A DNA stretch of 64,000 bases from the IMG/VR virus record IMGVR_UViG_3300043786_000977, positions 1-64,000 of that record; one strand, 5' to 3'. Shown in pieces: positions 1 through 42,910 of the stretch (position 1 is the first letter of the stretch; every line of letters starts with the position of its first letter). Both the position numbers and the translations under genes were made by a program. A model generated the notes under the pieces. That model searched no databases and was not told the origin of the DNA. It worked only from the letters and a program-made list of their open reading frames with translations.

Positions 1-1687
1 CGAAAAGCGCGGCGGACCTAAGGCAGTAAGTACGTTCCTGAATACGTTAACCAGGAATCCCAAGTACGCCAACGCCGCCCTTACATTTTACCCATCAGTC
101 GAGTCCCTGTACGTGCATCAGTTCGCGCCGGAACTGATGTCGAAGCGTGCCGCGCAGATCCGTGTGACGACGCAGGTTACGGACTATGTCGACGGGGAAG
201 CTAAGAAGCGTTTAGTGCGCGATGGTTTTACGATCGTGGATACACGTCCCGAGGCCAGTAAGAGTGAAGCCTACGACATCGACTATGAGCGTCGTTTCAG
301 TAATCCGGATGCATCAGGTACCTATCAGGTATTGCTCAAGGACGGCCGGACAACCAAGGCCTGGATCTTTATGCCGTCGAACGCGGCCAAGAACGGCGCT
401 GCGGTAGTCGTGGAACAAGACAAGCTGATGTACCGTCTGGCTGAGCCGGGCGCTGTATACGTCCGTGACACGGCTACGGGCGATACGGCTGATGCGTATT
501 CCAAGGCTGTCTCGATCGACGATATGGAAATGAATACGGAATACGTCTTGATCGACGACAAGGGCCACTCGACTGGTCCGGTTGAAGTACGTGCGATTAT
601 TGCGGAAGACGGGAAACGCACTAAGTTACGTGTCAACTGGCATGGTACCTACGATATTGTGAGACGGCCGACCTACGGCCATGATTTCGAGACGTTGCAC
701 AGTCGCGGTTTATCGTGTGCACCTTGTTGTGGTTCCTGTGATGCAGACTACATCGAATTGGCTGACCACAAGGGTTCGATTTCTAAGTCGGGTACCGACA
801 CGCTTATCCTTCCGTCGAACTGGAAGGCTCTAAAGCTGTACGACAAGAACAAGGGTGAAAAGGTGGATTCGTACGAGTCAGAGCGTATACTGCGTGATGC
901 GTTCCAGTTAGGGACACTCGTAGATGTAACCGAGGCGATGACAAAGAACTCGTTCCACAAGTTGACAGTAGCCTCAGACGACCAGGGTCTAGAGTACTAT
1001 TTCCGTGTTAACGACAACTTTGCGACACGGCCGATGGGTTATAAGCAGGCGTACGTGAACCTGGTGACCCGCTTCGGGTTGAGTGTACCGGATGCAGAGA
1101 CTATGCTGACTGAGGCAGCCTCACAGTTCAAGTGTCGGCGTCTCGTCAAGGTCGCACAGATGCCAGGAGGTCAGATGGTAGGCGTGGATATGCCACAACC
1201 CAACGATCCGTCCGCGCAGATGGATCCGAATACGGGTATGCCGATGTACCAGATGCCTTACGAGCAACAGATGACAGGTAGCATGACAGGTATGCCGCCT
1301 ACACCCGACGGGAATCAATTTGGAATCAATATCGGTGGTGAAGCCGAAATGGATTCGGGTGCTCAGAATCTTGCAGCACAGGCGGGTCAACTCGGCCAGA
1401 AACATATCTTCGATCATGCCTCTATCGGCGGTTTGTCAAAGGTGTATGACACTGGTGCCGTGCTTGATTCTTATGTACCTGAGTTGATGCAATCACTTGA
1501 TCGCCTGGGTCGTATCCTCTTCCTGTATTACTGGAAGAACGAGGATTTCGCTGAGCGTTACGGGACTAACGATATCGCTGAAATGGAAGACCTGATTCGC
1601 AGTGTCTTTAAGAGTTTCGGTGAACTGGTACTCCAGTTGCGTAAGAAGGCTATCGACAAGGATGATGCCAATACAGTTGAGATGTGA
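1..1687 (+). CDS. Head-module protein of unknown function, 5'-truncated; carries K-x-A motifs
   Basis: Frame 2 is open from base 2 (EKRGGPKAVSTF...) into the 113..1687 ORF, so the start is outside the window. SKRAA and VKVAQ motifs, a Met/Pro/Gln-rich linker after VKVAQ, and a helical C-terminus. Confidence 0.75.
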   Translation, partial: EKRGGPKAVSTFLNTLTRNPKYANAALTFYPSVESLYVHQFAPELMSKRAAQIRVTTQVTDYVDGEAKKRLVRDGFTIVDTRPEASKSEAYDIDYERRFSNPDASGTYQVLLKDGRTTKAWIFMPSNAAKNGAAVVVEQDKLMYRLAEPGAVYVRDTATGDTADAYSKAVSIDDMEMNTEYVLIDDKGHSTGPVEVRAIIAEDGKRTKLRVNWHGTYDIVRRPTYGHDFETLHSRGLSCAPCCGSCDADYIELADHKGSISKSGTDTLILPSNWKALKLYDKNKGEKVDSYESERILRDAFQLGTLVDVTEAMTKNSFHKLTVASDDQGLEYYFRVNDNFATRPMGYKQAYVNLVTRFGLSVPDAETMLTEAASQFKCRRLVKVAQMPGGQMVGVDMPQPNDPSAQMDPNTGMPMYQMPYEQQMTGSMTGMPPTPDGNQFGINIGGEAEMDSGAQNLAAQAGQLGQKHIFDHASIGGLSKVYDTGAVLDSYVPELMQSLDRLGRILFLYYWKNEDFAERYGTNDIAEMEDLIRSVFKSFGELVLQLRKKAIDKDDANTVEM

Positions 1688-1694
1688 GGGTAAT

Positions 1695-2360
1695 ATGACA
1701 ACATTTGAAGTATATATTTACGGCATGGTTAAGGCGTGCGAAGCACGTGGTGTAGACCCGGTCGAGGTCATAAAGACTGCTGCGCCTTTCAGTACGCCAG
1801 AATGGGAAGCGAAGCAACGGGATGCGGATGCACTTACCCGCGGTTGGAATAACCTAGGGCGCGGTATTTCGACTGCGTGGAATAGTGCGTCATGGCGTGG
1901 TGCCGGGCATGCCCGGGAATGGCAAGACAAAGTACAAAAGAGGGATACGATAGGGGCGGGAAATGACCAGATAGCAGTTGCTATGCGCGACAGAGAGTTC
2001 AGGGAGAACAGGGCTGCACAATTGCGCCAGCTTGCGGAATTGAAAAAGGAACCCAGCACGAATTCGTCATCTACCAGTGGATCTCGTATACCGGGTGGTG
2101 ACATATTCTATGATCCACAATACGGACGTGCTTCGGGTCGGTACGAGTATGCACCGACCCGTCCGTATATGACGCCCATGACTAATCTCGATGGCACTCC
2201 GCGGCCACCACCAGTACAGCGTCCGCCCGTGTCGCCCCTGCCGCCAGCGCAGCCCCCAGCACCAGCGGCACCTACGCCGCCAGCACCAGTGGCACCTACG
2301 CCGCCAGCACCAGCGGCACCTACGCCGCCAACACAGCTGCCTAAACCTGTGGTGCGCTAA
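1695..2360 (+). CDS. Putative internal virion protein with N-terminal leader (YGMVKAC...IKTAA) and Pro-rich tail
   Basis: ATG at 1695 follows a GAGGG RBS just after the upstream stop. The track start at 1602 overlaps the previous gene. Confidence 0.7.
   Translation: MTTFEVYIYGMVKACEARGVDPVEVIKTAAPFSTPEWEAKQRDADALTRGWNNLGRGISTAWNSASWRGAGHAREWQDKVQKRDTIGAGNDQIAVAMRDREFRENRAAQLRQLAELKKEPSTNSSSTSGSRIPGGDIFYDPQYGRASGRYEYAPTRPYMTPMTNLDGTPRPPPVQRPPVSPLPPAQPPAPAAPTPPAPVAPTPPAPAAPTPPTQLPKPVVR
2256..2327 (+). repeat. 3 x 24-bp tandem repeat encoding PAPAAPTP
   Basis: ccagcaccagyggcacctacgccg repeated three times. Confidence 0.9.
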
Positions 2361-2363
2361 TTT

Positions 2364-3341
2364 ATGCAAATTGGTAACACAATCATTACGACACCTGAGG
2401 ATCATCCTACACAGTTTGATCCTGCGTGGCGTAGTGCCGTGGCTGCGGCCTTAGCTGATAACCCAACAGCCGTTATCTCGGCCGATTATATGCAGTATAA
2501 GAGGGATGAGTGGATCAAGGAACATAAGGCGTACCTGATAGCGACGCGCACCCCGAATAGGGTGTTGTCCAAAGATCAGAAGGCGTTACGTCTGGCATCT
2601 CGGTTCTACCAAGGCAATCGGTCGAGTGATGTAAAGTTTAAACTCGAACCTCTTCTACTTACTGCGGTACCAGTCCCTATCATTTCACTGGATATCGGTG
2701 GTGGTCAGGTAGATCCCCAGGTGTTTGAGGCTTATGAGCGGTTATATTTCAACATACGATTGGACGACGGAAGTCTGCATCCTTCATTTCATATCAGGGA
2801 GTATTTTGCAATGCCACAAGGACAACCGAACCCGGAAACCCCAGATGAAGTTTTATGGCGTGTAATCGCAGCCCACATGGGTTATGATGTACTTGTTTCA
2901 ACATGGTTGTGGACAAAAGCGCACGGATTGAGTAAGTTATCTCCCAACGTATTGATGCAGTCGCTATGGACAGCGGCACAGGCGACACAATTTTTGGAGA
3001 TATTCGGAAAACGGGTTAGCCACTTCAACCTGGCAGCGTCTATGAAGTCATGGACCGATCAGGAACGAATGTTACGTGAAGCGGGTACTGTAGGTGTGGA
3101 GCAGAATGGTCAATCACAACTTTTGTTGAAATTCTTGAATCTATGCGCTCCGGAGATATTGCAGGTGGCACGCGATGTTGACGCGAATAAAGTTAGGACT
3201 ACCGAGATACAGAGCCGGCTTCTGTCTCAGCGTAACGTGACGAGTCAGTCAGTAGTTGACCACGGAGCAGATATCGGAATCGAGGGTCTCACGAAGTTGA
3301 TAGAAGGACAATTCAAATCAGGTAAGCAAATGGAGCAATAA
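2364..3341 (+). CDS. Hypothetical protein (head module)
   Basis: 325-aa ORF packed 2-3 bp from both neighbours. Confidence 0.75.
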   Translation: MQIGNTIITTPEDHPTQFDPAWRSAVAAALADNPTAVISADYMQYKRDEWIKEHKAYLIATRTPNRVLSKDQKALRLASRFYQGNRSSDVKFKLEPLLLTAVPVPIISLDIGGGQVDPQVFEAYERLYFNIRLDDGSLHPSFHIREYFAMPQGQPNPETPDEVLWRVIAAHMGYDVLVSTWLWTKAHGLSKLSPNVLMQSLWTAAQATQFLEIFGKRVSHFNLAASMKSWTDQERMLREAGTVGVEQNGQSQLLLKFLNLCAPEILQVARDVDANKVRTTEIQSRLLSQRNVTSQSVVDHGADIGIEGLTKLIEGQFKSGKQMEQ

Positions 3342-3343
3342 CC

Positions 3344-4825
3344 ATGACGACAAACGGACCATTTAAGGATAGACTGATGACGGCGCTGCACTCGGCAGTG
3401 GGCTACTTCAATCAGGACAACGACCCCAATGCTGCAGTGGTGAAGGCAGCCCACGATGCAGATTTTAACGTGGATCAGACAACGCGTCTGGTCGAAATGT
3501 TTAATACGGCACGTACCTTGTATCACTACAAGAACGCGTCAGACAGAACAGCGACCTTCACCCTGGCTGCTGCAGACGAGGTACTACCTATGTTGTTCGC
3601 GGTACCAGTAACTGTTGCAGAGAAGGCCGCGGCAGCGGATTATAGCACATACGAGCAGCGGGAACAGAGTTATCACGAAGCCGATTATATGGCTAAGGCG
3701 GCTGCGAGCATAAACGCACCGGTTGATGCGTCACTGTCTATGCAGGCTGTGGCTGATCAGGCTATGCGTGCGTTGCGTAATCTGCGACAGACGGCCAAGA
3801 TCGCTGAGGATGAGGCACGTATCGCCGGGCATAATGCGGCGCGTACGTTCCAGAAACTCGCTTCATTATTCGCTTACGGTGCAGATCGCCGCGTACTTGA
3901 AGATCGTTATGCACGACTTGTCGTAGGACACAAGGACGGCGAGTGGCAACCTGTGATTGTTAAACTTGGTGAATTCGTGCCCGCCCATAATAAAGCACCT
4001 GAAGCAATGTTCACCAAGTATGCACGGGTGTATGTCATTGACGATCGCGATCTGCACCCACACTTGGAACTTATGAAAGAGGCCCGGGACTGGATGCAGG
4101 CCGAAGCAGAGATGTTGGCTGCGTCCAGCCAGTTTACCAAGGAAGCCGATGACTTCGAACGTGAGTATCTCGTCGAACTATCCAGTTTTTTTCCACTCCC
4201 GGCCGCGCCCGGTCTCGCTTCGTTCATACGGCCTGAACTGATTAAAGCAGCCTTCGTACCGAACCCAGGCGGTGGACAGCAAGGCGGTGGACAGCAAGGC
4301 GGTGGACAGCAAGGCGGTGGAAAGCCAGGCGGTGGTCAGAAAGATAAGCCGGATAAGCCAGAAAGTGATAAACCCAATCGTTGGTTCACGACTGAACCCT
4401 ACGGCCTTGATGCTGTTCCGTCAGCGTTGTCTGACGGCATGAAACTGTCCCCTGGATCAATCAATGTCGAAGTGGAACGTGCATTCACGGAACCGATAGC
4501 ACGTAATAACCAGGCACTGAGCGAACGGTTAAAGAATGTCCAGCGATCCATTATGCTTCAGGACCTAATGGTGAACGATCCAGTATTATCTGAGGAAGCT
4601 CCCGAGGCTGTGGCGCAAGCGTATAGCGCGATGTTGCAGTTGGCCCCGGAGATGGCAGGTAACAAAGAAGTTGCGCGTGCCGTGTTGCGCCAGATGGTAC
4701 ACTCAGTTGCGGTCAGCCCGTACGATGCTGATATCTGGACGAAGCTGGAAGGCAATATCCGTAACCTACGCGGTAAGGGTGCGCCTATACCGCAACAACA
4801 GTCCGCTGGTGGAGGTAAACGATGA
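3344..4825 (+). CDS. K-x-A-rich putative prohead core/internal protein
   Basis: 493 aa, Ala-rich helical, about 11 K-x-A motifs, GGGQQ low-complexity linker after IKAAF. Confidence 0.7.
   Translation: MTTNGPFKDRLMTALHSAVGYFNQDNDPNAAVVKAAHDADFNVDQTTRLVEMFNTARTLYHYKNASDRTATFTLAAADEVLPMLFAVPVTVAEKAAAADYSTYEQREQSYHEADYMAKAAASINAPVDASLSMQAVADQAMRALRNLRQTAKIAEDEARIAGHNAARTFQKLASLFAYGADRRVLEDRYARLVVGHKDGEWQPVIVKLGEFVPAHNKAPEAMFTKYARVYVIDDRDLHPHLELMKEARDWMQAEAEMLAASSQFTKEADDFEREYLVELSSFFPLPAAPGLASFIRPELIKAAFVPNPGGGQQGGGQQGGGQQGGGKPGGGQKDKPDKPESDKPNRWFTTEPYGLDAVPSALSDGMKLSPGSINVEVERAFTEPIARNNQALSERLKNVQRSIMLQDLMVNDPVLSEEAPEAVAQAYSAMLQLAPEMAGNKEVARAVLRQMVHSVAVSPYDADIWTKLEGNIRNLRGKGAPIPQQQSAGGGKR
4268..4339 (+). 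repeat. 15-bp tandem repeat encoding GGGQQ
   Basis: ggcggtggacagcaa x3 plus two degenerate copies. Confidence 0.9.
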
Positions 4826-5178
4826 ACATACGTGTTTTTAAGAAACTGGACAACGGTGTTTACCAGATATCCGTGCATACGATGGATTGGAGTGAGGCTG
4901 ATAAAGCATTGATGGTAAAATACGGAGAACCCACGATAGACCTGGGCGGTTCATTCGTAGGTGAGACTCCGTATCTGGAATACATACTATCCACCAAACT
5001 CGTGCTTATCATGTCTGAATCCCCGTTTACGCAGCGTTTCGATTCCCGCGATGAAATCGATGCAGATGACCGGGCGACGTTGTGGAAGACCACCATAGTC
5101 GAACGTATCACATCTGAGTTGTTGAACTTACGGGCGAATGCTGATACATTTACAGGTGAAGAGGTAACGACCGTATGA
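4822..5178 (+). CDS. Hypothetical protein
   Basis: 118 aa, GGAGG RBS, ATGA overlaps at both ends. Confidence 0.75.
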   Translation: MNIRVFKKLDNGVYQISVHTMDWSEADKALMVKYGEPTIDLGGSFVGETPYLEYILSTKLVLIMSESPFTQRFDSRDEIDADDRATLWKTTIVERITSELLNLRANADTFTGEEVTTV

Positions 5179-5834
5179 TTAAACAAGCAGACATGAATCA
5201 ACTTCTTGCCGGCCTTAAAGATAAGGCATCACGTGGCGGTGCAGATATCAGTAAGTGGTATGCACGCTTGGATCCTGCAATGAAAGCTACGATCCAGCGC
5301 GGGCTTATCGGCGCTGCAGGTGGCGCGGCACTCACAGGCGGTATCGCGGCGGCTACACCACGCGACCCTGAGGATAAGGGCGGGGTAGTGGGACCGGCCC
5401 TGCTTGGTGCGTTGCTGGGCGGCGCTGGTGGTGCCCTGCTCCCGTATGGCGCGAAGATGCTTTCCGGCGGCGCTGGTGCGGGGGACACAAACAAACGGCC
5501 TATGGGTGCACGTGCGTTTGAGACCGTTACTGCGCCACTGGCTTGGCACCCGCTTATGTTCGGAGGCGGTATATATGGTGCCGCTAAGGCACGGCCTATC
5601 ATTTCCGAAGCAATGAAAGCCACGAAAGCATACAGGGCACAAGGTGGTAGTGGGCTGCGTGGTGCAAAAGAAGTCTTGTTCAACGGGTCCCATCCATTCT
5701 GGGCTAAGAAGCAGGTGATGGATGCCGCAGGTAAGGGCTGGTTAAAAGGTTCGCCGCGTGGCCGCTTGGCCATGCTCCCGTTGCTGGCCGGCCTGGGTTA
5801 CGCGGGCGATAAGTATTTGAAGGGGGAATGGTAA
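5175..5834 (+). CDS. Glycine-zipper membrane-type protein starting MIKQA
   Basis: Several GxxxG-rich hydrophobic segments (GLIGAAGGAALTGGIA; ALLGALLGGAGGALL), basic composition. Confidence 0.7.
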   Translation: MIKQADMNQLLAGLKDKASRGGADISKWYARLDPAMKATIQRGLIGAAGGAALTGGIAAATPRDPEDKGGVVGPALLGALLGGAGGALLPYGAKMLSGGAGAGDTNKRPMGARAFETVTAPLAWHPLMFGGGIYGAAKARPIISEAMKATKAYRAQGGSGLRGAKEVLFNGSHPFWAKKQVMDAAGKGWLKGSPRGRLAMLPLLAGLGYAGDKYLKGEW

Positions 5835-7249
5835 TGAGTGGCATGCTTAAACTCATCTACTCGTCAGCATTCGACAGCGGTGTTGACGTAGCAATGCGGA
5901 TCATCGAAGATCCTGCAGCACTGACTAAATCTGCTGGTACCGTATTCGGTCTCGACTACGATAAGCTACGTCCGGACGATCAGCATGTCGGTATCCACGT
6001 GACTGCATTAGGTGCGTTTGAGCGTTACGGTGCGAATCGTAATGGCGACTCATTCCCGAAGTTAGCGTGTGTCAGGTACCACGACACGTTCGTTAAACAC
6101 GGTGCGCTGTTCCGACATCATCGAAACAAGGATCGTGAAAAGAACCTGGGTTCGATTAAAGCGTCGGCTTGGAATCCAGTAATGGATCGTATCGAGTTAT
6201 TCGTTCATGCTAATAAGGAGCGGGCTGCAGATGAACTGACCCGGTTGGAGAAGGAAGGCGAGATACCTTTTTCCATGGCATGCAAAGTCGCGTTCGATCG
6301 TTGCAACCGCTGTAACACAGTACGTAAGAATGGCAGCGATCCACGCCAGTGTGATCACGTCAAGTACGAGTTGGGCAAGATGGCCGACGACGGTACTGTT
6401 ACGTGTACACATAACGATGAACCGGATTTCTTCGACATCAGTTTCGTAGGGCGGCCGGCCGATCGTATTGCGTGGCATCTTAAAGTTGCGGCAGGCGAAC
6501 TGATTGACTCGATAAAATTGGCTGATGCAGAAGGACTGTGGATACCTGATTATATCGCAATCGAGTCTTCAGCAGGGCAGGTTAAGTTAGCGCATTTGAA
6601 GCGCCTGGTCGCAGCACAGCAGATGTACTACGGATGGTTTACAAAACAGGCAGCAATACAAACACCAAAGGACCGCTATTTCTACGAGTTGAGGAAAGCG
6701 GCAGGAGTATCGTTAAGCGATGAAGTATTGACGAAGTTGCGTGAATACGAGCCTGCGGTTACGTTTAATGCTCTCGCACGGGCGGGTGTAATTTTGGACG
6801 TACCGTCATTCTTCAAGTATGCAATGGGTGATACGTATAGCGAAATCGCGTCATTAATCGATACGATAGCAGCGACAGTCCCTGTAGTTCTTGATACGGC
6901 GGTGAAGCAAGGTGACTGTCAGAGATTGTGTAACGACTGCACGTTTGATGTAGCAGCAGATAGGTCTACACAGATACCGAATGGCTTACTTACTAAATTG
7001 GCTGGGGCATCTTTGGTTGGTCCTTGTCGGGATGAACGGATTATCTCCGTTACCCTGGATGGAAATATACCAAAGTTTGCTGTTGACAAAGAACAACGAA
7101 TGGGGTTTAATATACCTGAAATAGTGGTGTTGGCGGAAAAGTATGCCGCCTACAAGTTATCAGCCCTAACGGCTGTGCTTGGATTCCACAAAGATACTGA
7201 TGTAGATTCACTGATAGCTATAACGGCTACACAGAATCTAGTGAGATAG
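5834..7249 (+). CDS. Prohead (capsid maturation) protease with Cys/His zinc-binding insert and K-x-A-rich C-terminal extension
   Basis: NRNGDSF, FRHH...LGSI, FSMACKV.FDRCNRC...CDH and FFDISFV..PAD motifs match HK97/assemblin-fold phage proteases. Lies upstream of scaffold and capsid. TAATG overlap gives start 5834. Confidence 0.7.
   Translation: MSGMLKLIYSSAFDSGVDVAMRIIEDPAALTKSAGTVFGLDYDKLRPDDQHVGIHVTALGAFERYGANRNGDSFPKLACVRYHDTFVKHGALFRHHRNKDREKNLGSIKASAWNPVMDRIELFVHANKERAADELTRLEKEGEIPFSMACKVAFDRCNRCNTVRKNGSDPRQCDHVKYELGKMADDGTVTCTHNDEPDFFDISFVGRPADRIAWHLKVAAGELIDSIKLADAEGLWIPDYIAIESSAGQVKLAHLKRLVAAQQMYYGWFTKQAAIQTPKDRYFYELRKAAGVSLSDEVLTKLREYEPAVTFNALARAGVILDVPSFFKYAMGDTYSEIASLIDTIAATVPVVLDTAVKQGDCQRLCNDCTFDVAADRSTQIPNGLLTKLAGASLVGPCRDERIISVTLDGNIPKFAVDKEQRMGFNIPEIVVLAEKYAAYKLSALTAVLGFHKDTDVDSLIAITATQNLVR
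7083..7111 (+). promoter_or_regulatory. Sigma-70-type promoter inside the 3' end of the protease gene, facing scaffold/capsid genes
   Basis: TTGACA-N17-TTTAAT. Confidence 0.6.
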
Positions 7250-7266
7250 TAACAGGAGCGACGATT

Positions 7267-8502
7267 ATGGCAAATCCAACATTGAAACAGATCCTCGATG
7301 ATACACGTCGGCTGGTAGCGTCGAAGCAGGCTAGCGCGACGAAGGCAGGAGAGATTGCAGGACAGGCGCCGAGTTCAATGCCTGGTTCAGAACATGACAG
7401 TGCGGTACCGGCTGAACACAAGAAGCCAGATGCCGAGACCCGCGACGGTACCATGGTACCCGCGTCTGGTTTAACGACAGCAGGAGCTGGTGATGACAGT
7501 ACGATAACACGCGGTCACGCCCTGGAATCTGACGAGGCGGCAGAGACACCCGTGAAGAAGCCAGCGATTACGGCGGACGCTAACGCAAAGACAGCAGAAG
7601 GTTCGGCGACATTAGCCAACGAAATTCTGTCGCTCGTGCGTTCAGTGCAGAAGACTGCAGCAGCCCCCAAGGTTGTCGAAACCCCCAAGGTTGTCGAAAC
7701 CCCCAAGGTAGCCGCAGCCCCCAAGGTCGTAGCCAAGCAGGTTACAGCGCCTGAGGTCACTGCAACACCGAAGGTCGCGGCAGACGACTTGAACATGGAA
7801 CTGACGACTGACGTTATGGCCAAGATCGCTGCAATCATCCTATCGACGGAAGAGGGTGCACGCGTGACCGAGAAGATCTTGCAAGAACAGGCCGGCGCCG
7901 AGATGGCCCGTGAGACACTTGGTTTCTTGGCAAAGCAGTCGGAACTTGCTGAGAAGCAGGCTGCGTTTGAACAGGGTCAGGCGGACGCCCAGGCAGCGAT
8001 CGATCGGGCGTTGTATGCAGCAGGATTACGTGCGGGACAACAGAAGCAAGCTTTCCGTAAGTTGGGTCAGGCTGCGGCCGACGCCAGCATGGGTGAGCTC
8101 ATGGGTGGCGCAGGCGGCGATGCAGGTGGCGATCCGATGGCGGGCGATCCTGCGGCCGGTGCAGCCGAGGGCGATCCTATGGCCGGCGGAGAAGGTGGAG
8201 AAGGCGGCGAGATCACGATGGAAGACATTGTGGCAGCCCTCGAGTCCATGGTCCAGGATGGTTCGTTAAAGCCTGAAGATGCACAGCAATTGCTGACCGA
8301 ACTCACGAACGGTGCAGGCGGAGACCCGGCGGCCGGTGCAGACCCGATGGCCGGTGCTGCGGGTGCGGAAGGTGCAGACCCGATGGCCGGTGCTGCGGGT
8401 GCGGAAGGTGCAGACCCGATGGCAGGCGCGGAGGGCGCTCCGGCCAATAAGGCAGCGGCCATGCTCGATGTAATTCGCCAGCTGCAGAAATCAAAGGCTT
8501 AA
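7267..8502 (+). CDS. Putative scaffolding/core protein
   Basis: Acidic, Ala/Gly-rich, low complexity, about 9 K-x-A motifs, between protease and capsid genes, AGGAG RBS. Confidence 0.6.
   Translation: MANPTLKQILDDTRRLVASKQASATKAGEIAGQAPSSMPGSEHDSAVPAEHKKPDAETRDGTMVPASGLTTAGAGDDSTITRGHALESDEAAETPVKKPAITADANAKTAEGSATLANEILSLVRSVQKTAAAPKVVETPKVVETPKVAAAPKVVAKQVTAPEVTATPKVAADDLNMELTTDVMAKIAAIILSTEEGARVTEKILQEQAGAEMARETLGFLAKQSELAEKQAAFEQGQADAQAAIDRALYAAGLRAGQQKQAFRKLGQAAADASMGELMGGAGGDAGGDPMAGDPAAGAAEGDPMAGGEGGEGGEITMEDIVAALESMVQDGSLKPEDAQQLLTELTNGAGGDPAAGADPMAGAAGAEGADPMAGAAGAEGADPMAGAEGAPANKAAAMLDVIRQLQKSKA
7666..7737 (+). repeat. 18-bp tandem repeat encoding PKVVET/PKVAAA
   Basis: Four cccaaggt-initiated 18-bp units. 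Confidence 0.8.
8335..8423 (+). repeat. 36-bp tandem repeat encoding GADPMAGAAGAE
   Basis: Two exact copies plus a partial third. Confidence 0.9.
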
Positions 8503-8545
8503 GGCCTGCGGTTCCTGTGGTGGCCCATGTAGTAGGAGGACCGCT

Positions 8546-8902
8546 ATGGATACAGTAACACAAGAATTGTTGGTCAAGACGGCGGCGTACATCGAACGTA
8601 CGCAGCCCTTGCTTGATTCACAAAACGAACAGCGAACAGCATTCACGAAACGAGCAACACAGGCAGCCGGTGTGCTAGCACACCGCGGTATCATTGATAC
8701 GCGCCGTGTCAACGAATTCGTTGACAAGGTAGCAGCAGATCCGACAGCTGTCTGGGAGTTCGTCGAGAAACTGGCAGCAGTAGTGCCAGCGGACACGTGG
8801 GGCGAAGCGGTGCGTCAAAAGGTCGCATCGAGTGGTAAAGTGGATCCATTCGAACGGATATTTTTCGGCATCGGTGCCGAGAGATCCGGAATGGTAGATT
8901 AA
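8546..8902 (+). CDS. Small K-x-A-rich head/core protein
   Basis: 118 aa; 5 of 6 lysines are in K-x-A; AGGAGG RBS. Confidence 0.75.
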   Translation: MDTVTQELLVKTAAYIERTQPLLDSQNEQRTAFTKRATQAAGVLAHRGIIDTRRVNEFVDKVAADPTAVWEFVEKLAAVVPADTWGEAVRQKVASSGKVDPFERIFFGIGAERSGMVD

Positions 8903-8915
8903 CAGGAGAAAGACT

Positions 8916-9458
8916 ATGGCATGGTTTAGTCCAATAAAGGGTGGGTATCCGGGATTGCAACAGATCGATAAGACTCTAGCAGTAGGGTCTGAAGAGACTG
9001 GCATTGTTCGCGGATCGTTGGTGTATGTGGATGGTAGCGGCACGGCGCCCGTGTTTAAGTTAGCGGGTGCAGCGCAGGCTACAGATCCTTCGGCCTATAT
9101 CTATTTCACGCTCGTCGGTCAGGATGATTTCCAGGCTGGCGCGGCGGGAACGATTGGGCAGGGTCCTGCAGGTGGGTCGGCGCGTATTACGGCATTGGCC
9201 GTCGGTCAGCCCATGGAGTTCCAGACAGATCAGTTCGATGCAGAGGGTGACTATGCAGTTGGCACGCTGTTGACAGTCGGCGCCGACGGCAAGTTGACAC
9301 CACAGACTACCGGACAGAACGTTGTAGCGCAGGTTACAGCCGTTCCGTTTGAACGCTGGGTGAATGATGCGGTAGCCGTGGCCGGCCGCCGTACTGGTGC
9401 GTTGCTTGAGGTTATCAACGCCAGTACAATGTGGATTCCGACATTGACCGTGTCGTAA
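8916..9458 (+). CDS. Putative capsid decoration/cement protein
   Basis: 180 aa, beta-rich, with a YAVGTLLTVGADGKL motif typical of decoration proteins; directly upstream of the capsid gene. Confidence 0.55.
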   Translation: MAWFSPIKGGYPGLQQIDKTLAVGSEETGIVRGSLVYVDGSGTAPVFKLAGAAQATDPSAYIYFTLVGQDDFQAGAAGTIGQGPAGGSARITALAVGQPMEFQTDQFDAEGDYAVGTLLTVGADGKLTPQTTGQNVVAQVTAVPFERWVNDAVAVAGRRTGALLEVINASTMWIPTLTVS

Positions 9459-9499
9459 TAGAACGAAATAGGAAATAATCTTTAAGGGAGAATGGACAT

Positions 9500-10456
9500 A
9501 TGGATACGACACAAAACATCCCGACCCCGGTAATGAATGCAAAGATCTTGGAAGCCTTGGATCGTGACAACGTGAAGATGGCCCAGGACGCTTCTACGGA
9601 TTACACCCGTACAGGCATTCGTGAAGAGTCATTCGCGTTTAAGATTCAGCCGCCCGAGAAGGCTACTGATGACATGCTCGATCGCGCTCTCGATGAACGC
9701 TTGCAGATCATCTGGGAGTTGGAACCCGATAGCCCTGGGGCTAAGTGGGTACCGTTGCAGACAGTGCCAGACGGTGAATACATCACCGGTTCGCGGTACA
9801 TCATTCCGTTTGCACGCGTATTGACCCCGAAGTTCGTGAAGGACATCGACGAACTTCGCACCACTCGTCAGGACATTCGCAAGATTCTGACCGACAACTC
9901 CATCAAGGACGCGTTGGGCGAAATCGATAGCAAGTGGATCTCGACGGTTAACTCGATCGTGTTCGACGCGCCTGCAGCGGGCGAAGCGAACAACGAGACA
10001 GGCAAGGTTCAGTGGGTTGACTTTGCGGACGGCATCACACGCGATACCTTCGCCGAAGCCAAGAAGCTATTGCCCCGTGGTAATGCACAGGGTAAGTTCC
10101 GTCTACGCAACTACATCGCGCTGATGAACGATGTATCTGCACAGGACCTGTTGAAGCGTCCTGCAACGGATGTCGGTGACGAGATCGCCGGCGACACGTG
10201 GAAGAACGGTCTGACGACTGATACAATCATGGGCGTGAAGTGCGTCTTCACGATCAAGAGCGATTTGGTCCCGGACAACTACGTGTACTTCTTCGCGGCC
10301 CCAGAGTTCCTGGGCAAGTGTTTCTACCTGACAGACTGGACAATGTACATGAAGAAGGAAGCGTACTTCATCGAGATGTTCAGCTACTGGCTGGGTGGTT
10401 TCGCCTTCGGTAACATCGCCGGTATGGCGTTGGCGCGGTTCAATCAGAACAGCTAA
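9500..10456 (+). CDS. Major capsid protein (HK97-fold, inferred)
   Basis: 318 aa, last in protease-scaffold-decoration order, strong C-ending codon bias, followed by a terminator; VKMAQ near the N-terminus. Confidence 0.7.
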   Translation: MDTTQNIPTPVMNAKILEALDRDNVKMAQDASTDYTRTGIREESFAFKIQPPEKATDDMLDRALDERLQIIWELEPDSPGAKWVPLQTVPDGEYITGSRYIIPFARVLTPKFVKDIDELRTTRQDIRKILTDNSIKDALGEIDSKWISTVNSIVFDAPAAGEANNETGKVQWVDFADGITRDTFAEAKKLLPRGNAQGKFRLRNYIALMNDVSAQDLLKRPATDVGDEIAGDTWKNGLTTDTIMGVKCVFTIKSDLVPDNYVYFFAAPEFLGKCFYLTDWTMYMKKEAYFIEMFSYWLGGFAFGNIAGMALARFNQNS

Positions 10457-10476
10457 CCGAGGTCTGCACACGAAAC

Positions 10477-10514
10477 GGGTGGCCATGGCCAGTAGGGTCT
10501 GGCCACCCTTTTTT
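10477..10514 (+). terminator. Rho-independent terminator after the capsid gene
   Basis: gggtggcca...tggccaccc stem followed by T6. Confidence 0.85.
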
Positions 10515-10533
10515 ATTATCGACGGGAGTGAAT

Positions 10534-10965
10534 ATGAACATGGAACTCAGAGTTTCAGAACACTGGTTGAATGGATTTAACAAGGCCGCAGAGGCCATGG
10601 GTTTGACACCTGAGCAGGTACCCAGCCTATTTAGGCTGGCACAACGACTTGAAACCAGGGCCGCAGATCCTGAGACCTTCGATAAGGGTGCTGAGGCTGT
10701 GCTAAAGATGGAGAAGGTCGCGATCAATATCAAGTCACTGTTACTTTTGGGACTCGGTGGTGGCGCGGCACTGGGTGGGAGTTCGTTGATGGGTTCGTTC
10801 GGCAGATCGATGGAAGATAAGGAGTTCGCTAAACGTATGCGCCAGGCGCGTGAAATCTATTCACGTAACAAGACCCACCAGCTTTCACTAGCTTCGTTGC
10901 CGGGTATGGGAGGCGGACAGCAAGGTGGTTACGGCATGGGCGGTTACGGTCAGTATCCGTACTGA
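10534..10965 (+). CDS. Putative internal virion protein: K-x-A leader plus one glycine-rich hydrophobic segment
   Basis: WLNGFNKAA...EKVA leader then LLLLGLGGGAALGG. Start is uncertain among 10528, 10534 and 10540. Confidence 0.65.
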   Translation: MNMELRVSEHWLNGFNKAAEAMGLTPEQVPSLFRLAQRLETRAADPETFDKGAEAVLKMEKVAINIKSLLLLGLGGGAALGGSSLMGSFGRSMEDKEFAKRMRQAREIYSRNKTHQLSLASLPGMGGGQQGGYGMGGYGQYPY

Positions 10966-10978
10966 GAGGTAGCATACT

Positions 10979-11413
10979 ATGGCAGCCGCTGTTGGTAATG
11001 ATAAATTCCTGACTGATCTCGATGTCCGTATCTGGTTACGCGACAACGATCCGAATGCCAATTTGCTTTTAGCAGATTACGAATTCTCACCCGAAGAAAT
11101 ACGCACAGCGATGACGCTGGCGGCTGACTACTGGAACGAACAACCACCCAACATCGGGTGTTATGACTATACGCATTTTCCATGGCGATCGAATCTGTTA
11201 AAGGGTACTTCAGCTAACCTGCTGTTCATCGCAGCACACCGTTTCCGGCGCAACGCACTCAAGTATAATGCTGGCGGTCTGTCTGTAGGCGATCAGGATA
11301 AGCATAAAGAGTACGATGAAGCAGGAGCGCGTTTATGGGAAGAATTCAAGGTCTGGGTGGCACAGATGAAACGTGCCATTAATATTGAACGTGGTTTTGC
11401 GGTGATATCGTGA
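10979..11413 (+). CDS. Putative head-tail adaptor/neck protein
   Basis: 144 aa, helical, positioned between capsid and tail genes, GAGG RBS. Confidence 0.45.
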   Translation: MAAAVGNDKFLTDLDVRIWLRDNDPNANLLLADYEFSPEEIRTAMTLAADYWNEQPPNIGCYDYTHFPWRSNLLKGTSANLLFIAAHRFRRNALKYNAGGLSVGDQDKHKEYDEAGARLWEEFKVWVAQMKRAINIERGFAVIS

Positions 11414-12183
11414 CGGTACCTTTCACACATGTAATGATCACGCCCAGCTATGCTTCAGGCTTTGCGTATAACTGGGAATTGAGTGGCGGTTTTGTAGATC
11501 CGGTGCCGTGGGAGTTTGTTGTTCAGCAGGCGCCGGCACCTACAGGCCCGTGGACAAGCATATCGCCCAGCACGCGTATGTACCGGTGGGCAGAGCCAGT
11601 ATCACGGCAGATCAATAAGGATGCAGTCCTATATTTCCGTATACAGTTGGTCACACCCAAGGGTACTTACGTATCGAATACCGTGATGCCTTACGGAGAC
11701 TTGAAGAAGCGTGAGTATCTTATAGCCCAGGATATAATGAGGCAGGAGATACTGCACGCACGCACGTTGGCTGGTACCCCGGGACAGATTTGGTTGGTGA
11801 GTACGTTTGGGCCGAGATGCACAGTGTGCGTCGATCCTATAACAGGAGGGGTCCGTGATGCGAATTGCAAGCTATGTTTCGGCACAGGGCGTTTACCAGC
11901 ATATCATGGACCTTACGAGACGTGGTGGACATTTAGTAATCCAACGAAAACAACACAGATGTCCCCAGACGGGTCAGGTACTTTAGAACCGCGGACGTTC
12001 ACTGTGCGCATGATCGGTACACCCATTATGAAGAAGAATGATTTGGTAGTCGACAGCGGTACCGGTAAACGCTATTATGTAGACAACGTTCAAGTTGTTG
12101 CAGAAATCAGGCGTATACCGATCGTGCAGATGTTGACTGTACACGAAGCACCGCTGTCTGATGTAGCCTACAAGGTCGTGTAA
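11410..12183 (+). CDS. Putative head-closure/neck protein with CxxC...CxxC.GTG zinc finger
   Basis: RCTVC...NCKLCFGTG and C-terminal NDLVVD...RYYV beta motif; synteny. Confidence 0.45.
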   Translation: MTVPFTHVMITPSYASGFAYNWELSGGFVDPVPWEFVVQQAPAPTGPWTSISPSTRMYRWAEPVSRQINKDAVLYFRIQLVTPKGTYVSNTVMPYGDLKKREYLIAQDIMRQEILHARTLAGTPGQIWLVSTFGPRCTVCVDPITGGVRDANCKLCFGTGRLPAYHGPYETWWTFSNPTKTTQMSPDGSGTLEPRTFTVRMIGTPIMKKNDLVVDSGTGKRYYVDNVQVVAEIRRIPIVQMLTVHEAPLSDVAYKVV

Positions 12184-12869
12184 TGAGTAATCTTCCAAAT
12201 GACATTCCGGCAAAGGAGTTAATGGATGACCACGCGTATTCCGGTCATGAACTCCTGCGTCATACACGCAAAACACCGACAGTGTTATACGGTATTTTTG
12301 TCGAGCTCGCTCGTCAGTTTTATATGAAAACGGAGAATCATATACTCGGTACGCCGCTTAAATTGTGGTCCCCGGATCCGAAGGAAACTGAGATCTGGAT
12401 TGATACCGAGTATCAATGGGAAGACGAACACCCTGAAAAGCGTCCCGCAATATACGTACAATTATCACCTATCGTTTATGCATCGTTTACGGGGCGCAAG
12501 GATGGACTGACAGGCATGAATACGCGTGACGGTCAATATCACTTTAGCCGCGGAGGCACAGGCACCGTGTCCTTTGTGCATTTGGGCGGCACTGCGAGTG
12601 AAGCGTGTGCGTTGGCTGATTCTACGCTGGACTACTTCGACGCATTTGGTATGGTGATACGTGATGATTTTTGTTTTCTCTCGTTCGAGGTTAAACAAAG
12701 GATACCCAGACGGCTTAGGCCGCAGGAAGCGAAAGAACGTTACGACAGCGTCGTGGCGTGCGAATTTACTTTCCAAGACAAGTGGTCTTTGAAGGTGGAG
12801 TCGAGAAAGATGAAGGCACTATTATTTAGTGCTGGACAACGACTCCTGGATACGACTATAGTACAGTAA
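12183..12869 (+). CDS. Putative tail completion/terminator protein
   Basis: KRPAIYV motif; directly upstream of the sheath gene. Confidence 0.45.
   Translation: MSNLPNDIPAKELMDDHAYSGHELLRHTRKTPTVLYGIFVELARQFYMKTENHILGTPLKLWSPDPKETEIWIDTEYQWEDEHPEKRPAIYVQLSPIVYASFTGRKDGLTGMNTRDGQYHFSRGGTGTVSFVHLGGTASEACALADSTLDYFDAFGMVIRDDFCFLSFEVKQRIPRRLRPQEAKERYDSVVACEFTFQDKWSLKVESRKMKALLFSAGQRLLDTTIVQ
12833..12862 (+). promoter_or_regulatory. Candidate sigma-70-type promoter for sheath/tube
   Basis: TGGACA-N18-TATAGT ending 48 bp before the sheath ATG. Confidence 0.4.
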
Positions 12870-12909
12870 TGATTGGGCCAGAAACCCAGGATAAAAGAAG
12901 GAGCAGAAT

Positions 12910-16059: not shown

Positions 16060-16066
16060 CAAATAC

Positions 16067-16092
16067 GCGGGTGGTGTATAACCACCACCCGC
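16067..16092 (+). other. Perfect 10-bp GC-rich hairpin between sheath and tube genes
   Basis: gcgggtggtg-tataac-caccacccgc with no U-tract. Confidence 0.7.
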
Positions 16093-16110
16093 TTCACAAA
16101 GGAGAATACT

Positions 16111-16626: not shown

Positions 16627-16688
16627 GTATAGTCCAGCAATAATCTGATCGGCGCTGGGACGAAATACGAAATATTCTCCCACCACTT

Positions 16689-16747
16689 ACCCAGCCCGGA
16701 TGATACGCGGTGACACGCATCTATCGTCTGGGTTGGGTTTATTTTTA
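16689..16747 (+). terminator. Long-stem terminator after the tube gene
   Basis: acccagcccggatgata / tatcgtctgggttgggt 17-bp stem with G-U pairs, then ttattttt. Confidence 0.75.
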
Positions 16748-16760
16748 GGAGTAACGACGA

Positions 16761-19247: not shown

Positions 19248-19258
19248 CGAGGTATAAA

Positions 19259-20436: not shown

Positions 20437-20452
20437 TTGGTGGAAATAAGCA

Positions 20453-24136: not shown

Positions 24137-24145
24137 GAGCCAGTT

Positions 24146-27004: not shown

Positions 27005-27022
27005 TTGACGATAGGAGCATTT

Positions 27023-28107: not shown

Positions 28108-28117
28108 GAGTATTATC

Positions 28118-28612: not shown

Positions 28613-28614
28613 GT

Positions 28615-32518: not shown

Positions 32519-32530
32519 GTGGAGGTCAAC

Positions 32531-35578: not shown

Positions 35579-35593
35579 TACCAAAGGGGTTAA

Positions 35594-42898: not shown

Positions 42899-42910
42899 CA
42901 AGGGGATATT

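What the first reader, a model, noticed from the sequence alone, without database searches (positions are those of the whole stretch)
1..10965. K-x-A motif saturates head-module proteins: candidate prohead-protease cleavage code
Seen (hand counts): K-x-A covers 5 of 6 lysines in 8546..8902, 13 of about 30 in the protease, about 11 in 3344..4825 and about 9 in the scaffold. One copy lies near the capsid N-terminus (VKMAQ). The 1049-aa sheath has only about 3. Motifs often sit at borders between folded and low-complexity segments (VKVAQ|MPGG, IKAAF|VPNPGGG). Known: large myophage prohead proteases cut short motifs ending in Glu (T4 gp21; phiKZ/SPN3US S/A/G-x-E), and their substrates are enriched in that motif. 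Inference: this phage's protease cleaves after K-x-A, a specificity I do not know to be described, so the motif would mark core, scaffold and cargo proteins genome-wide.
Basis: partly seen in the sequence, partly recalled or inferred. Interest (0 to 1): 0.85.

Follow-up and report, generated by a model that had tools for sequence, protein, structure and literature searches.

The report
Lys-x-Ala motif marks phage head-core proteins
A short Lys-x-Ala motif is packed into the head-assembly proteins of this uncultured large phage and its relatives, and it most likely marks where the phage's own head protease cuts, at a site type not found described for phages.

Summary
Of 1600 gapped dipeptides, K-x-A is the most enriched in window 1..10965 (53 against 25 expected, z 6.2). 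It is also first in the head modules of all 16 relatives examined, down to 30% capsid identity.

Enrichment is confined to the same syntenic proteins: ORF1, 3344..4825, the protease, the scaffold-like protein, two small proteins, and a distal gene at 54905..55957. Capsid, decoration, sheath and about 40 other ORFs show none.

The full motif is hydrophobic-x-K-x-A-[S/A/E]. It is selected at protein level, and K and A are conserved more than other K and A residues. Near-universal copies flank the protease catalytic domain, and one sits at capsid residues 26-28.

The protease model's only meaningful PDB match is T4 gp21. The same scan on T4 recovers its known I/L-x-E cleavage motif.

The best reading is a prohead-protease recognition code with Lys at P3 and Ala at P1. 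Cleavage itself and the cut position remain unproven. I rate it a new variant of a known kind. It is directly testable in the cultured relative Salmonella phage Arash.

The parts
2..1687 (+). ORF1, the C-terminal 561 aa of a roughly 790-aa conserved head-module protein that runs off the window start. It is a predicted substrate. It is not shown to be the portal.
   Evidence: The window fragment has 5 K-x-A against 3.0 expected. Full-length relatives have 9-16 against about 4. In them the sites cluster in two roughly 150-column zones and are almost absent elsewhere. It is a weak homologue of Arash gp218, an abundant virion protein. No Pfam, PHROG or PDB match.
3344..4825 (+). 493-aa head-core protein with a Gly/Gln-rich linker. 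Predicted substrate.
   Evidence: 11 K-x-A against 3.7 expected, p 2e-4. Homologues are enriched in most relatives shown, including Arash gp220 (10 against 3.0). Three sites are universal: A36 13/13, A96 13/13, A120 12/13.
5828..7249 (+). Prohead protease. An N-terminal T4 gp21-like catalytic domain (about aa 40-215) is joined by a disordered linker to a C-terminal helical domain.
   Evidence: AF2 model has pLDDT 78. The only meaningful Foldseek PDB hit is T4 gp21 5JBL, probability 0.99, TM 0.51. Homologous to Arash gp222 and phage G gp19, which both match phrog_18299 'head maturation protease'. 13 K-x-A against 3.4 expected.
6119..6121 (+). His98, putative catalytic histidine.
   Evidence: Invariant in 12 relatives. 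Matches T4 gp21 His85 by spacing from the shared N-R-N motif (manual comparison with the sequence). hhalign was not significant.
6272..6274 (+). Ser149 in I-P-F-S-M-A-C, putative nucleophile.
   Evidence: Invariant. Resembles T4 gp21 I-P-G-V-S140. In 47 of the best 150 family representatives, inteins interrupt the protein at A151|C152 or before C159.
5927..5935 (+). K34-S-A36, a conserved motif copy upstream of the catalytic domain. Candidate autoprocessing site.
   Evidence: K34 is invariant and A36 is present in 11/12. Kept in 58/58 closer homologues. 101 of 103 family representatives have K-x-A within aa 16-60.
6482..6490 (+). K219-V-A221 in the low-confidence interdomain linker. Candidate autoprocessing site that would release the catalytic domain.
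   Evidence: K219 is invariant and A221 is present in 11/12. The linker 209-237 has pLDDT below 50. 87 of 88 representatives have K-x-[A/S] within 25 aa after the P-A-D-R motif. Phage G gp19 has the equivalent E-K-V-A-S.
7267..8502 (+). Scaffold-like Ala-rich, low-complexity protein between the protease and the capsid gene.
   Evidence: 10 K-x-A against 5.5 expected, p 0.03. Homologues or positional equivalents score 9-20 against 3.8-11 in relatives, and Arash gp223 scores 8 against 3.0. The scaffold role is inferred from position and composition only.
8546..8902 (+). 118-aa small core protein. Predicted to be cut into peptides of about 13-26 aa.
   Evidence: 5 of 6 Lys are in K-x-A, against 0.8 expected, p about 1e-4. 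Homologues score 5-6 against about 1.
9500..10456 (+). Major capsid protein (HK97 fold). Not enriched overall.
   Evidence: Homologous to Arash gp226, annotated as major capsid protein. The profile hits PDB 6WKK, phage G gp27, at E 1e-3. The Atlas gives capsid clusters at 0.98. 3 K-x-A against 1.9 expected.
9575..9583 (+). K26-M-A28, the only clade-wide conserved K-x-A in the capsid protein. Candidate propeptide cut.
   Evidence: Present in 13/13 relatives, one shifted by a column. Phage G has A-L-A at the equivalent place.
10528..10965 (+). 145-aa small protein after the capsid gene. Weakly enriched.
   Evidence: 3 against 0.8 expected, p 0.03. Positional equivalents in L012 and L015 score 4 against 0.7-0.8, p 0.004 or lower.
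54905..55957 (+). 350-aa K-x-A-rich protein outside the head module. The start is revised to the ATG after an AAGGAG site. Predicted packaged or core protein.
   Evidence: 12 of 21 Lys are in the motif, against 3.2 expected, p about 5e-5. All 85 homologues (27-82% identity) are enriched: 1059 against 264 expected, minimum 2.7-fold. Several homologues are recorded with longest contigs of the same lengths as those of protease homologues.

Best explanation
K-x-A is the core of the recognition motif of this clade's own prohead protease. The fuller motif is [F/L/M]-x-K-x-A followed by S, A or E.

The protease is the product of 5828..7249. It has a T4 gp21-like (assemblin-fold) serine protease domain, with putative His98 and Ser149, fused to a helical C-terminal domain.

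Proposed mechanism:
1. The protease co-assembles inside the prohead with the scaffold-like protein, the small core proteins, 3344..4825, ORF1 and the distal 54905..55957 product.
2. After shell assembly it cuts at the motif, most likely after the Ala (Lys at P3, Ala at P1, Ser/Ala/Glu at P1').
3. It frees its own catalytic domain at the two conserved flanking sites.
4. It chops core and scaffold proteins into short peptides.
5. It probably removes the first 28 residues of the capsid protein.

Shown here: the motif's enrichment, its restriction to one syntenic protein set, its extended logo, purifying selection on K and A, site turnover with constant density, the protease fold, and a positive control on T4.

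Inferred: that the motif is cleaved, which bond is cut, and what happens to the fragments.
For: 1. K.A is the top-ranked of 1600 gapped dipeptides in the window head region. It is also top in each of 16 relatives' head modules, z 5.3-9.2.

2. The same scan on T4 gp20-gp24 returns I.E first. On the T4 core proteins it returns I.E then L.E, which is the known gp21 cleavage motif. A prohead-protease code therefore leaves exactly this signature.

3. Enrichment is limited to the same syntenic proteins in all relatives. It never appears in capsid, decoration, sheath or neighbouring genes.

4. In the complete Arash genome there is no global excess. The three best of 202 ORFs flank the protease, and five proteins (3% of residues) hold 30 of 61 strict motifs.

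5. The logo from 587 sites, and independently from 1419 sites, is P5 F/L/M, P4 E/V/T/I, P3 K, P2 Q/T/V/L, P1 A, P1' S/E/A with Pro depleted, P2' D/A.

6. K-x-A is the core of the motif. [FLMI].K.A is 7.3-fold enriched and K.A[SAE] 5.9-fold. [FLMI].K without the Ala is 0.92-fold. R.A, K.S, K.G and K.T are not enriched.

7. In 58 closer protease homologues, motif Lys is 84% conserved against 56% for other Lys (p 0.004). Motif Ala is 80% against 52% (p 0.003). The middle residue is average.

8. Sites turn over while density is kept. There are 179 sites in 63 alignment columns among 12 proteases. All 103 intein-free family representatives are enriched at least 2.05-fold.

9. Near-universal sites bracket the catalytic domain, and one lies at capsid residues 26-28.

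10. The protease fold matches T4 gp21. Arash gp222 and phage G gp19 match phrog_18299, 'head maturation protease'.

11. Ser at P1' matches the reported preference of SPN3US gp245 (PMC10052503). It also matches the A|S sites of herpesvirus assemblin (my own knowledge).

12. The signal is not a DNA motif, not a shared paralogous domain, and not Lys/Ala-rich composition: K-A is 1.05-fold and A.K 0.82-fold.
Against: - There is no proteomic or biochemical evidence of any cut.
- The Arash virion proteome lists the K-x-A-rich gp220, gp222, gp223, gp225 and gp242 with 80-100% stated coverage (PMC10585845). That argues against complete degradation and expulsion. However, the preparation was a sucrose-gradient fraction yielding 116 proteins, and the coverage figures look unreliable (100% from 2 peptides for gp11).
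- Many sites lie in predicted helices or strands, including inside the catalytic domain: K78, and K153 just after Ser149.
- The capsid N-terminal region is homologous to that of phage G gp27. That protein lacks the Lys, and its PDB chain is nearly full length. Conservation of K26/A28 could therefore be structural.
- The window protease matches no Pfam or PHROG protease model directly. The profile comparison with T4 gp21 is not significant.
Confidence: 0.72

Rival explanations
1. The same protease and the same motif, but the cut falls after the Lys: hydrophobic-x-K | x-A. Lys would be at P1 and the hydrophobic residue at P3. This mirrors the T4 gp21 grammar (L/I-x-E|) with the charge reversed.
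For: - The protease fold is closest to T4 gp21, which uses a hydrophobic P3 and a charged P1.
- F/L/M two residues before the Lys is strongly enriched.
- At the two conserved protease sites, Lys is more strictly conserved than Ala. K34 and K219 are invariant, while A36 and A221 are each replaced by T or S in one relative.
Against: - Hydrophobic-x-K without the downstream Ala is not enriched at all (0.92-fold), whereas K-x-A without the hydrophobic residue still is (1.86-fold).
- This register would place strong requirements at P2' (Ala) and P3' (Ser/Ala/Glu). That is unusual for this protease class.
- Ser immediately after the Ala fits a P1' preference, as in SPN3US gp245.
Confidence: 0.14
2. 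K-x-A is a non-proteolytic short linear motif. It could be a binding or targeting element that recruits proteins into the prohead core, or a recognition site for a lysine modification or crosslink.
For: - The motif-rich proteins are detected in Arash particle preparations, apparently with high coverage.
- Many copies sit in predicted helices.
- No cleavage has been demonstrated.
Against: - Ten to twenty copies per protein, with rapid positional turnover, is unlike a docking motif.
- Informative positions alternate (P5, P3, P1). That fits an extended strand bound by a protease, not helical periodicity.
- Pro is excluded at the following position.
- Conserved copies bracket the protease domain.
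- The T4 control shows that a cleavage code gives this pattern.
- No candidate lysine-modifying enzyme was noticed in the head module. Most of its ORFs match no family.
Confidence: 0.1
3. The signal is a chance, compositional or annotation artefact of Ala- and Lys-rich helical proteins.
For: The enriched proteins are Ala-rich and largely helical. The scaffold-like protein alone is only marginally significant (p 0.03).
Against: - The signal survives whole-protein and 20-residue block shuffles.
- K-A, K..A and A.K are not comparably enriched.
- 5175..5834 is rich in K and A yet has only 1 K-x-A against 3.2 expected.
- The result replicates in 16 relatives, 103 protease representatives and 85 homologues of 54905..55957.
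- The pattern is in frame only.
Confidence: 0.02

Closest known systems
Bacteriophage T4 gp21 prohead protease and its L/I-x-E cleavage code (gp22, gp67, gp68, IPs, gp23, gp24)
   Same: - The fold is the best structural match (5JBL).
- The gene sits just upstream of the scaffold and capsid genes.
- Motif-level matches: N-R-N, His, I-P-x-S.
- The X-x-Y grammar of the motif is shared.
- The motif is over-represented in core proteins and in the protease itself. [LI].E scores 16 against 5.8 in gp22 and 7 against 2.6 in gp21.
- Autoprocessing and degradation of the core are known for T4 (established knowledge).
   Different: - The motif here is K-x-A, not L/I-x-E, and [LI].E is not enriched.
- There is no significant sequence match to gp21 or to Pfam models.
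- The protein is 473 aa with a large extra helical C-terminal domain.
- There is an additional hydrophobic preference at P5.
phiKZ gp175 / SPN3US gp245 giant-phage prohead proteases (S/A/G-x-E)
   Same: - A large myovirus setting, with an RNA polymerase detected in particles of the relative Arash.
- The same X-x-Y grammar.
- A Ser preference at P1' (PMC10052503).
- Many head proteins carry multiple motif copies, and the protease cuts itself.
   Different: - [SAG].E is not enriched here (1.08-1.11-fold).
- P1 would be Ala rather than Glu, and P3 Lys rather than a small residue.
- Homology to gp175 or gp245 was not tested directly.
Herpesvirus assemblin (MEROPS S21), cleaving (V/L/I)-x-A|S
   Same: - Same fold superfamily as T4 gp21 (established knowledge).
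- Ala at P1 and Ser at P1'. K.AS is 9-fold enriched here.
   Different: - P3 is Lys with a hydrophobic residue at P5. [VLI].A is not enriched (0.87-1.0-fold).
- Assemblin cuts only a few sites, whereas here there are dozens per prohead core.
- No sequence relationship was detected.
Salmonella phage Arash (OQ632216) gp222, and Bacillus phage G gp19
   Same: - Homologous proteases (tblastn E 3e-31 and 2e-8). Both match phrog_18299 'head maturation protease'.
- Arash shows the same code very cleanly.
- Phage G shows it more weakly (K.A rank 5; gp19 8 against 2.5; gp21 7 against 2.8) and keeps the flanking sites.
   Different: - Neither phage has published cleavage-site data. The Arash paper does not mention a protease or cleavage, and phage G gp19 is only annotated.
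- The phage G capsid protein has no K-x-A at all.

Membership tests
T4 gp21-type prohead protease (MEROPS S77 / Pfam Peptidase_S77) | Significant sequence match to the family model or to gp21. | tested here: not met
   No Pfam hit for the window protein or any of 12 relatives, even at E up to 10. hhalign against T4 gp21 gives probability 0.13%.
T4 gp21-type prohead protease (MEROPS S77 / Pfam Peptidase_S77) | Assemblin-like fold of the catalytic domain. | tested here: met
   The AF2 model (pLDDT 78) has 5JBL chains A and B as its only meaningful Foldseek PDB hits: probability 0.98-0.99, TM 0.48-0.51 on the target, E 0.02-0.03.
T4 gp21-type prohead protease (MEROPS S77 / Pfam Peptidase_S77) | Conserved catalytic His and Ser at equivalent positions. 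| tested here: inconclusive
   His98 and Ser149 are invariant. They match T4 His85 and Ser140 by spacing and local motifs (N-R-N; I-P-x-S) in a manual comparison. There is no structural superposition or significant alignment. The T4 residue numbers are recalled from the literature.
T4 gp21-type prohead protease (MEROPS S77 / Pfam Peptidase_S77) | Gene located in the head module directly upstream of the scaffold and major capsid genes. | tested here: met
   The order is protease, scaffold-like protein, small core protein, decoration-like protein, capsid. It is conserved in 16 relatives.
T4 gp21-type prohead protease (MEROPS S77 / Pfam Peptidase_S77) | Cleavage after Glu in L/I-x-E. | tested here: not met
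   [LI].E is enriched only 1.07-1.26-fold in the predicted substrates, against 2.8-3.0-fold for K.A. This is an in-silico proxy only.
T4 gp21-type prohead protease (MEROPS S77 / Pfam Peptidase_S77) | Demonstrated proteolysis of prohead core and capsid proteins. | not testable with these tools
   Requires mass spectrometry or co-expression.
PHROG 18299 'head maturation protease' | Match to the family profile. | tested here: inconclusive
   The window protein has no hit at E 0.01 or below. Its homologues Arash gp222 (E 2e-6) and phage G gp19 (E 3e-19) do match. The link is transitive through tblastn.
phiKZ gp175 / SPN3US gp245 proteases | Substrates enriched in S/A/G-x-E. | tested here: not met
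   [SAG].E is 1.08-fold (window) and 1.11-fold (pooled).
Herpesvirus assemblin (S21) | Cleavage consensus (V/L/I)-x-A|S. | tested here: inconclusive
   A followed by S is part of the motif: K.AS is 9.1-fold enriched, and AS without the Lys is 0.63-fold. [VLI].A is not enriched. No sequence membership was detected.
HK97-fold major capsid protein (for 9500..10456) | Homology to a capsid protein of known structure. | tested here: met
   The profile hits PDB 6WKK, phage G gp27, at E 1e-3. It is 30% identical to the annotated Arash capsid protein. Atlas capsid clusters score 0.98. My own structure prediction could not be run.

The most novel reading that the evidence does not exclude
A very large, almost entirely uncultured clade of roughly 180-210 kb myoviruses uses a prohead protease with a Lys(P3)/Ala(P1) specificity, unlike any characterised phage protease. 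The protease family has about 2,100-4,000 clusters at 50% identity, all found so far unnamed. The specificity sits between the T4/phiKZ X-x-Glu grammar and the herpesvirus x-Ala|Ser site. Because substrates carry the motif at 3-4 times expectation, the internal-head and packaged proteome (for example 54905..55957 and Arash gp242) could be read from sequence alone across the clade.
Probability: 0.55. Interest if true: 0.68.

Novelty: new variant of a known kind. Interest (0 to 1): 0.6.

Why it matters
Prohead-protease specificities are known experimentally for only a handful of phages. Where they are known, they have been the key to identifying scaffold, core and ejected proteins.

Here a specificity is inferred purely from sequence for a family that public databases call 'hypothetical protein'. 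The family comprises thousands of lineages.

If confirmed, the finding would do four things:
- Add a new P3/P1 combination to the assemblin-fold protease family.
- Give a sequence-only rule for predicting prohead-core and packaged proteins in a large uncultured phage group.
- Supply cleavage-site hypotheses for a cultured Salmonella phage (Arash), for three Vibrio phages with homologous protease and capsid genes, and possibly for phage G.
- Show that an unbiased gapped-dipeptide scan of head modules can discover protease codes in metagenomic phages. The scan recovers the T4 code as a control.

Tried and rejected
- **Family searches.** Pfam and PHROGs on ten head and related proteins gave nothing useful. 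Pfam on all 12 protease relatives at E up to 10 gave no peptidase family.
- **T4 comparison.** hhalign of the protease profile against T4 gp21 was not significant. The profile search of PDB sequences gave only noise.
- **ORF1 as portal: not supported.** It has no Pfam, PHROG or PDB-profile hit. Arash's annotated portal, gp204, is a different gene with no homologue in the window.
- **DNA-level motif: rejected**.
- **Shared paralogous domain among substrates: rejected.** Only low-complexity matches were found.
- **Lys/Ala-rich (histone-H1-like) composition: rejected.** K-A and A.K are not enriched.
- **Hydrophobic-x-K as the true core: rejected.** It is 0.92-fold without the Ala.
- **Homology between 54905..55957 and Arash gp242: none**.
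- **IMG/VR pattern search with 54905..55957:** found only the source contig. The Atlas gave only viral hypothetical clusters.
- **Arash paper and supplements:** no cleavage or peptide-level data and no deposited raw files are mentioned.
- **Literature searches for a Lys/Ala prohead-protease motif:** nothing found. The phage G cryo-EM paper is not in the searchable library.
- **Tools unavailable.** The first structure job was rejected because it included an Arash row, and was resent without it.
- **An error of mine.** One call used a wrong frame for 54905. It was corrected.

Full report
**Context**

The window is the first 64 kb of IMG/VR contig IMGVR_UViG_3300043786_000977, which is 208,908 bp long. 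It has 50-54% G+C and almost all genes are on the + strand.

The head genes match almost no Pfam or PHROG family. The cultured relatives are:
- Salmonella phage Arash: protease N-terminal half 39% identical, capsid 30%.
- Vibrio phages D69, D148 and D181.
- Bacillus phage G gp19, more distantly.

The sheath assignment holds (phrog_279, E 6e-13). The capsid assignment holds too: Arash annotation, a profile hit to PDB 6WKK (phage G gp27), and Atlas capsid clusters.

ORF1 at the window start is not shown to be a portal. Arash's annotated portal is a different gene that has no homologue in the window.

**The observation**

| Gene | K-x-A observed | Expected | p |
|---|---|---|---|
| 3344..4825 | 11 | 3.7 | 2e-4 |
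| 5828..7249 (protease) | 13 | 3.4 | about 5e-5 |
| 8546..8902 | 5 | 0.8 | about 1e-4 |
| 7267..8502 (scaffold-like) | 10 | 5.5 | 0.03 |
| 10528..10965 | 3 | 0.8 | 0.03 |

These values come from composition-preserving shuffles. None of about 40 other ORFs in the window is enriched, with one exception.

That exception is 54734..55957. Its real start is the ATG at 54905, after an AAGGAG site. It has 12 of 21 Lys in the motif, p about 5e-5.

An unbiased scan of all 1600 residue pairs at gaps 0-3 puts K.A first in the head region: 53 against 25 expected. It scores z 6.2 with whole-protein shuffles and z 6.0 with 20-residue block shuffles.

The codon pattern occurs 54 times in frame and once out of frame, and uses all synonymous codons. 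The substrates share no paralogous domain. K-A, K..A and A.K are not comparably enriched. The gene 5175..5834 is rich in K and A yet has 1 site against 3.2 expected.

**Relatives**

Fifteen IMG/VR loci with a syntenic head module were fetched. Their proteases are 30-47% identical to the window's and their capsids 29-71%.

In each of these, and in Arash, K.A is the first-ranked of the 1600 pairs, z 5.3-9.2. The same syntenic proteins carry the excess everywhere:
- ORF1 homologues
- 3344..4825 homologues
- the protease
- the scaffold-position protein
- the small protein after it
- in some clades, the small protein after the capsid gene

Capsid, decoration, neck, sheath and flanking genes never carry it.

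In full-length ORF1 homologues the sites fall in two zones of about 150 alignment columns. They are nearly absent from the rest of the protein.

**Genome-wide test in Arash**

In the complete Arash genome (202 ORFs of 80 aa or more), total K-x-A equals expectation: 252 observed against 252.6 expected.
- The three most enriched ORFs are gp220, gp225 and gp223, all next to the protease gp222.
- Next come gp242 and gp222 itself.
- Five proteins, 3% of residues, hold 30 of 61 strict motifs.
- The capsid protein has exactly one strict motif, at residue 27.

**The motif**

Logos from 587 sites (window plus relatives) and from 1419 sites (103 protease-family representatives) agree:
- P5: F/L/M
- P4: E/V/T/I
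- P3: K
- P2: Q/T/V/L, with G and D depleted
- P1: A
- P1': S/E/A, with P, I and L depleted
- P2': D/A

Conditional enrichments show that K-x-A is the core:
- [FLMI].K.A is 7.3-fold enriched.
- K.A[SAE] is 5.9-fold.
- K-x-A without the hydrophobic residue is still 1.86-fold.
- [FLMI].K without the Ala is 0.92-fold.
- R.A, K.S, K.G and K.T are not enriched.

K.AS is 9.1-fold enriched, while AS not preceded by K-x is depleted to 0.63-fold. The informative positions alternate (P5, P3, P1), as expected for a strand bound in extended conformation.

**Selection**

In 58 closer protease homologues (50-95% identity):
- Motif Lys is 84% conserved against 56% for other Lys (p 0.004).
- Motif Ala is 80% conserved against 52% (p 0.003).
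- The middle residue is average.
- Every homologue has 11-22 copies.

Across 12 more distant proteases, 179 sites occupy 63 alignment columns. Most sites therefore turn over while density is kept.

A few sites are near-universal:
- Protease K34-x-A36 and K219-x-A221. They bracket the conserved catalytic domain, and the second lies in a linker with pLDDT below 50.
- Three sites in the 3344..4825 family.
- Capsid K26-x-A28, present in 13/13.

**The protease**

The AF2 model has pLDDT 78. Its only meaningful PDB match is T4 gp21 (5JBL, probability 0.99, TM 0.51).

Manual comparison with the T4 sequence aligns N70-R-N with N51-R-N, His98 with His85, and I-P-F-Ser149 with I-P-G-V-Ser140. The profile alignment, however, is not significant.

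Arash gp222 and phage G gp19 match phrog_18299, 'head maturation protease'. A recent phage G paper lists gp19 among the head maturation proteases (PMC12484599).

The family is very large:
- 3995 clusters at 50% identity with E 1e-3 or lower, and 2134 with E 1e-30 or lower.
- All named members are 'hypothetical protein' with no precomputed Pfam domain.
- All 103 intein-free representatives are enriched in K-x-A at least 2.05-fold, in total 1423 against 383 expected.

**Positive control**

The identical scan on T4 gp20-gp24 ranks I.E first. On the T4 core proteins it ranks I.E then L.E. That is the experimentally known gp21 code.

The known motifs of T4, phiKZ/SPN3US and herpesviruses are not enriched in the present substrates.

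**Interpretation**

The simplest account is that K-x-A is the recognition motif of this clade's gp21-like prohead protease. By analogy with T4 and phiKZ/SPN3US (PMC10052503, PMC5694885), it would be used for autoprocessing, for destruction of scaffold and core proteins, and probably for trimming the capsid N-terminus.

The cut is most likely after the Ala. The Ala is as indispensable as the Lys, and the next residue is preferentially Ser. Ser is also the P1' preference of SPN3US gp245 and of herpesvirus assemblin (my own knowledge). A cut after the Lys, mirroring T4's hydrophobic-x-charged grammar, is not excluded.

**A distal predicted substrate**

The product of 54905..55957 meets this.
- All 85 of its homologues (27-82% identity) are enriched: 1059 against 264 expected, minimum 2.7-fold.
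- Several homologues are recorded with longest contigs of the same lengths as those of protease homologues.

In Arash, gp242 also fits. It is a virion protein detected with 21 peptides. It is not detectably homologous to 54905..55957.

**Caveats**

- No cleavage has been observed.
- The Arash proteome reports the motif-rich proteins in particles with high stated coverage. This argues against complete removal. However, the preparation yielded 116 proteins, the coverage values are questionable, and no peptide-level data are available.
- Many sites lie in predicted regular secondary structure.
- The capsid N-terminus is homologous to that of phage G gp27. That protein has A-L-A at the equivalent position, no K-x-A anywhere, and a near-full-length PDB chain.
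- Phage G shows only a weaker K.A signal: rank 5 in the head module, with gp19 and gp21 enriched.

**Verdict**

The interpretation passes all the sequence-based tests available but still needs one proteomic or biochemical experiment.

I rate it a new variant of a known kind of system: an assemblin-fold prohead protease with a cleavage code. The inferred specificity is not found described in the literature I could search.

Noticed in passing
Protease family (homologues of window 5828..7249, e.g. P0001, P0002, P0046). The window copy is intein-free.: 47 of the best 150 family representatives are about 850-1300 aa long because inteins interrupt the protease. Pfam finds Hint_2, Intein_splicing and LAGLIDADG_3 domains. 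The inteins sit either between A151 and C152 of the F-S-M-A-C motif or just before C159, that is, inside the putative active site.
   Followed up: partly
window 40295..42898 (+), with antisense ORF 40504..42258: An 867-aa protein with 14 tandem 46-aa repeats, each with two Cys (consensus around ...S-L-D-I-P-C-M-P-L-S-V...). It explains the odd I-P, C-M and M-P dipeptide excess outside the head module. The 584-aa antisense ORF is probably a by-product of the repeats.
   Followed up: partly
window 58738..62895 (+) and 42911..44818 (+): A 1385-aa protein with a signal-peptide-like N-terminus and many G-T-T-N-type repeats: T-N occurs 49 times against 12.7 expected. The 635-aa neighbour also has a T-N excess. 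These are possibly fibre or surface proteins.
   Followed up: no
window 49419..50522 (+), 50515..52029 (-), 56972..58708 (+): Three genes with family matches: UDP-galactopyranose mutase (GLF, E 1e-63), a protein with a GT-D-like glycosyltransferase domain, and a protein combining a LigD 3'-phosphoesterase domain with DUF192.
   Followed up: no
window 5175..5834 (+): A Gly-zipper-like protein inside the head module. It is rich in Lys (18) and Ala (39) yet has only one K-x-A against 3.2 expected. That single copy is M-I-K-Q-A-D at the extreme N-terminus.
   Followed up: no
window 54734..55957 (+): The mechanical ORF start (GTG at 54734) overlaps the minus-strand gene 52060..54846. The likely true start is ATG 54905, after AAGGAG. 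Many homologues carry a precomputed DUF6582 (PF20223) hit.
   Followed up: yes
L024 (Bacillus phage G 5137-29616): Phage G protease gp19 and gp21 are K-x-A enriched (8 against 2.5; 7 against 2.8). gp19 keeps K-x-A copies on both sides of its catalytic domain. The capsid protein gp27 has none. The code may reach this 497-kb phage in part.
   Followed up: partly
L020-L023 (Salmonella phage Arash): The published virion proteome lists RNA polymerase subunits as the most abundant proteins and 116 'structural' proteins in total. The stated coverages (for example 100% from 2 peptides) look unreliable, so the list probably includes contaminants.
   Followed up: no
window 1..64000: No tRNA genes are present in the window (ARAGORN), whereas the relative Arash is reported to encode 21 tRNAs (PMC10585845).
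   Followed up: no
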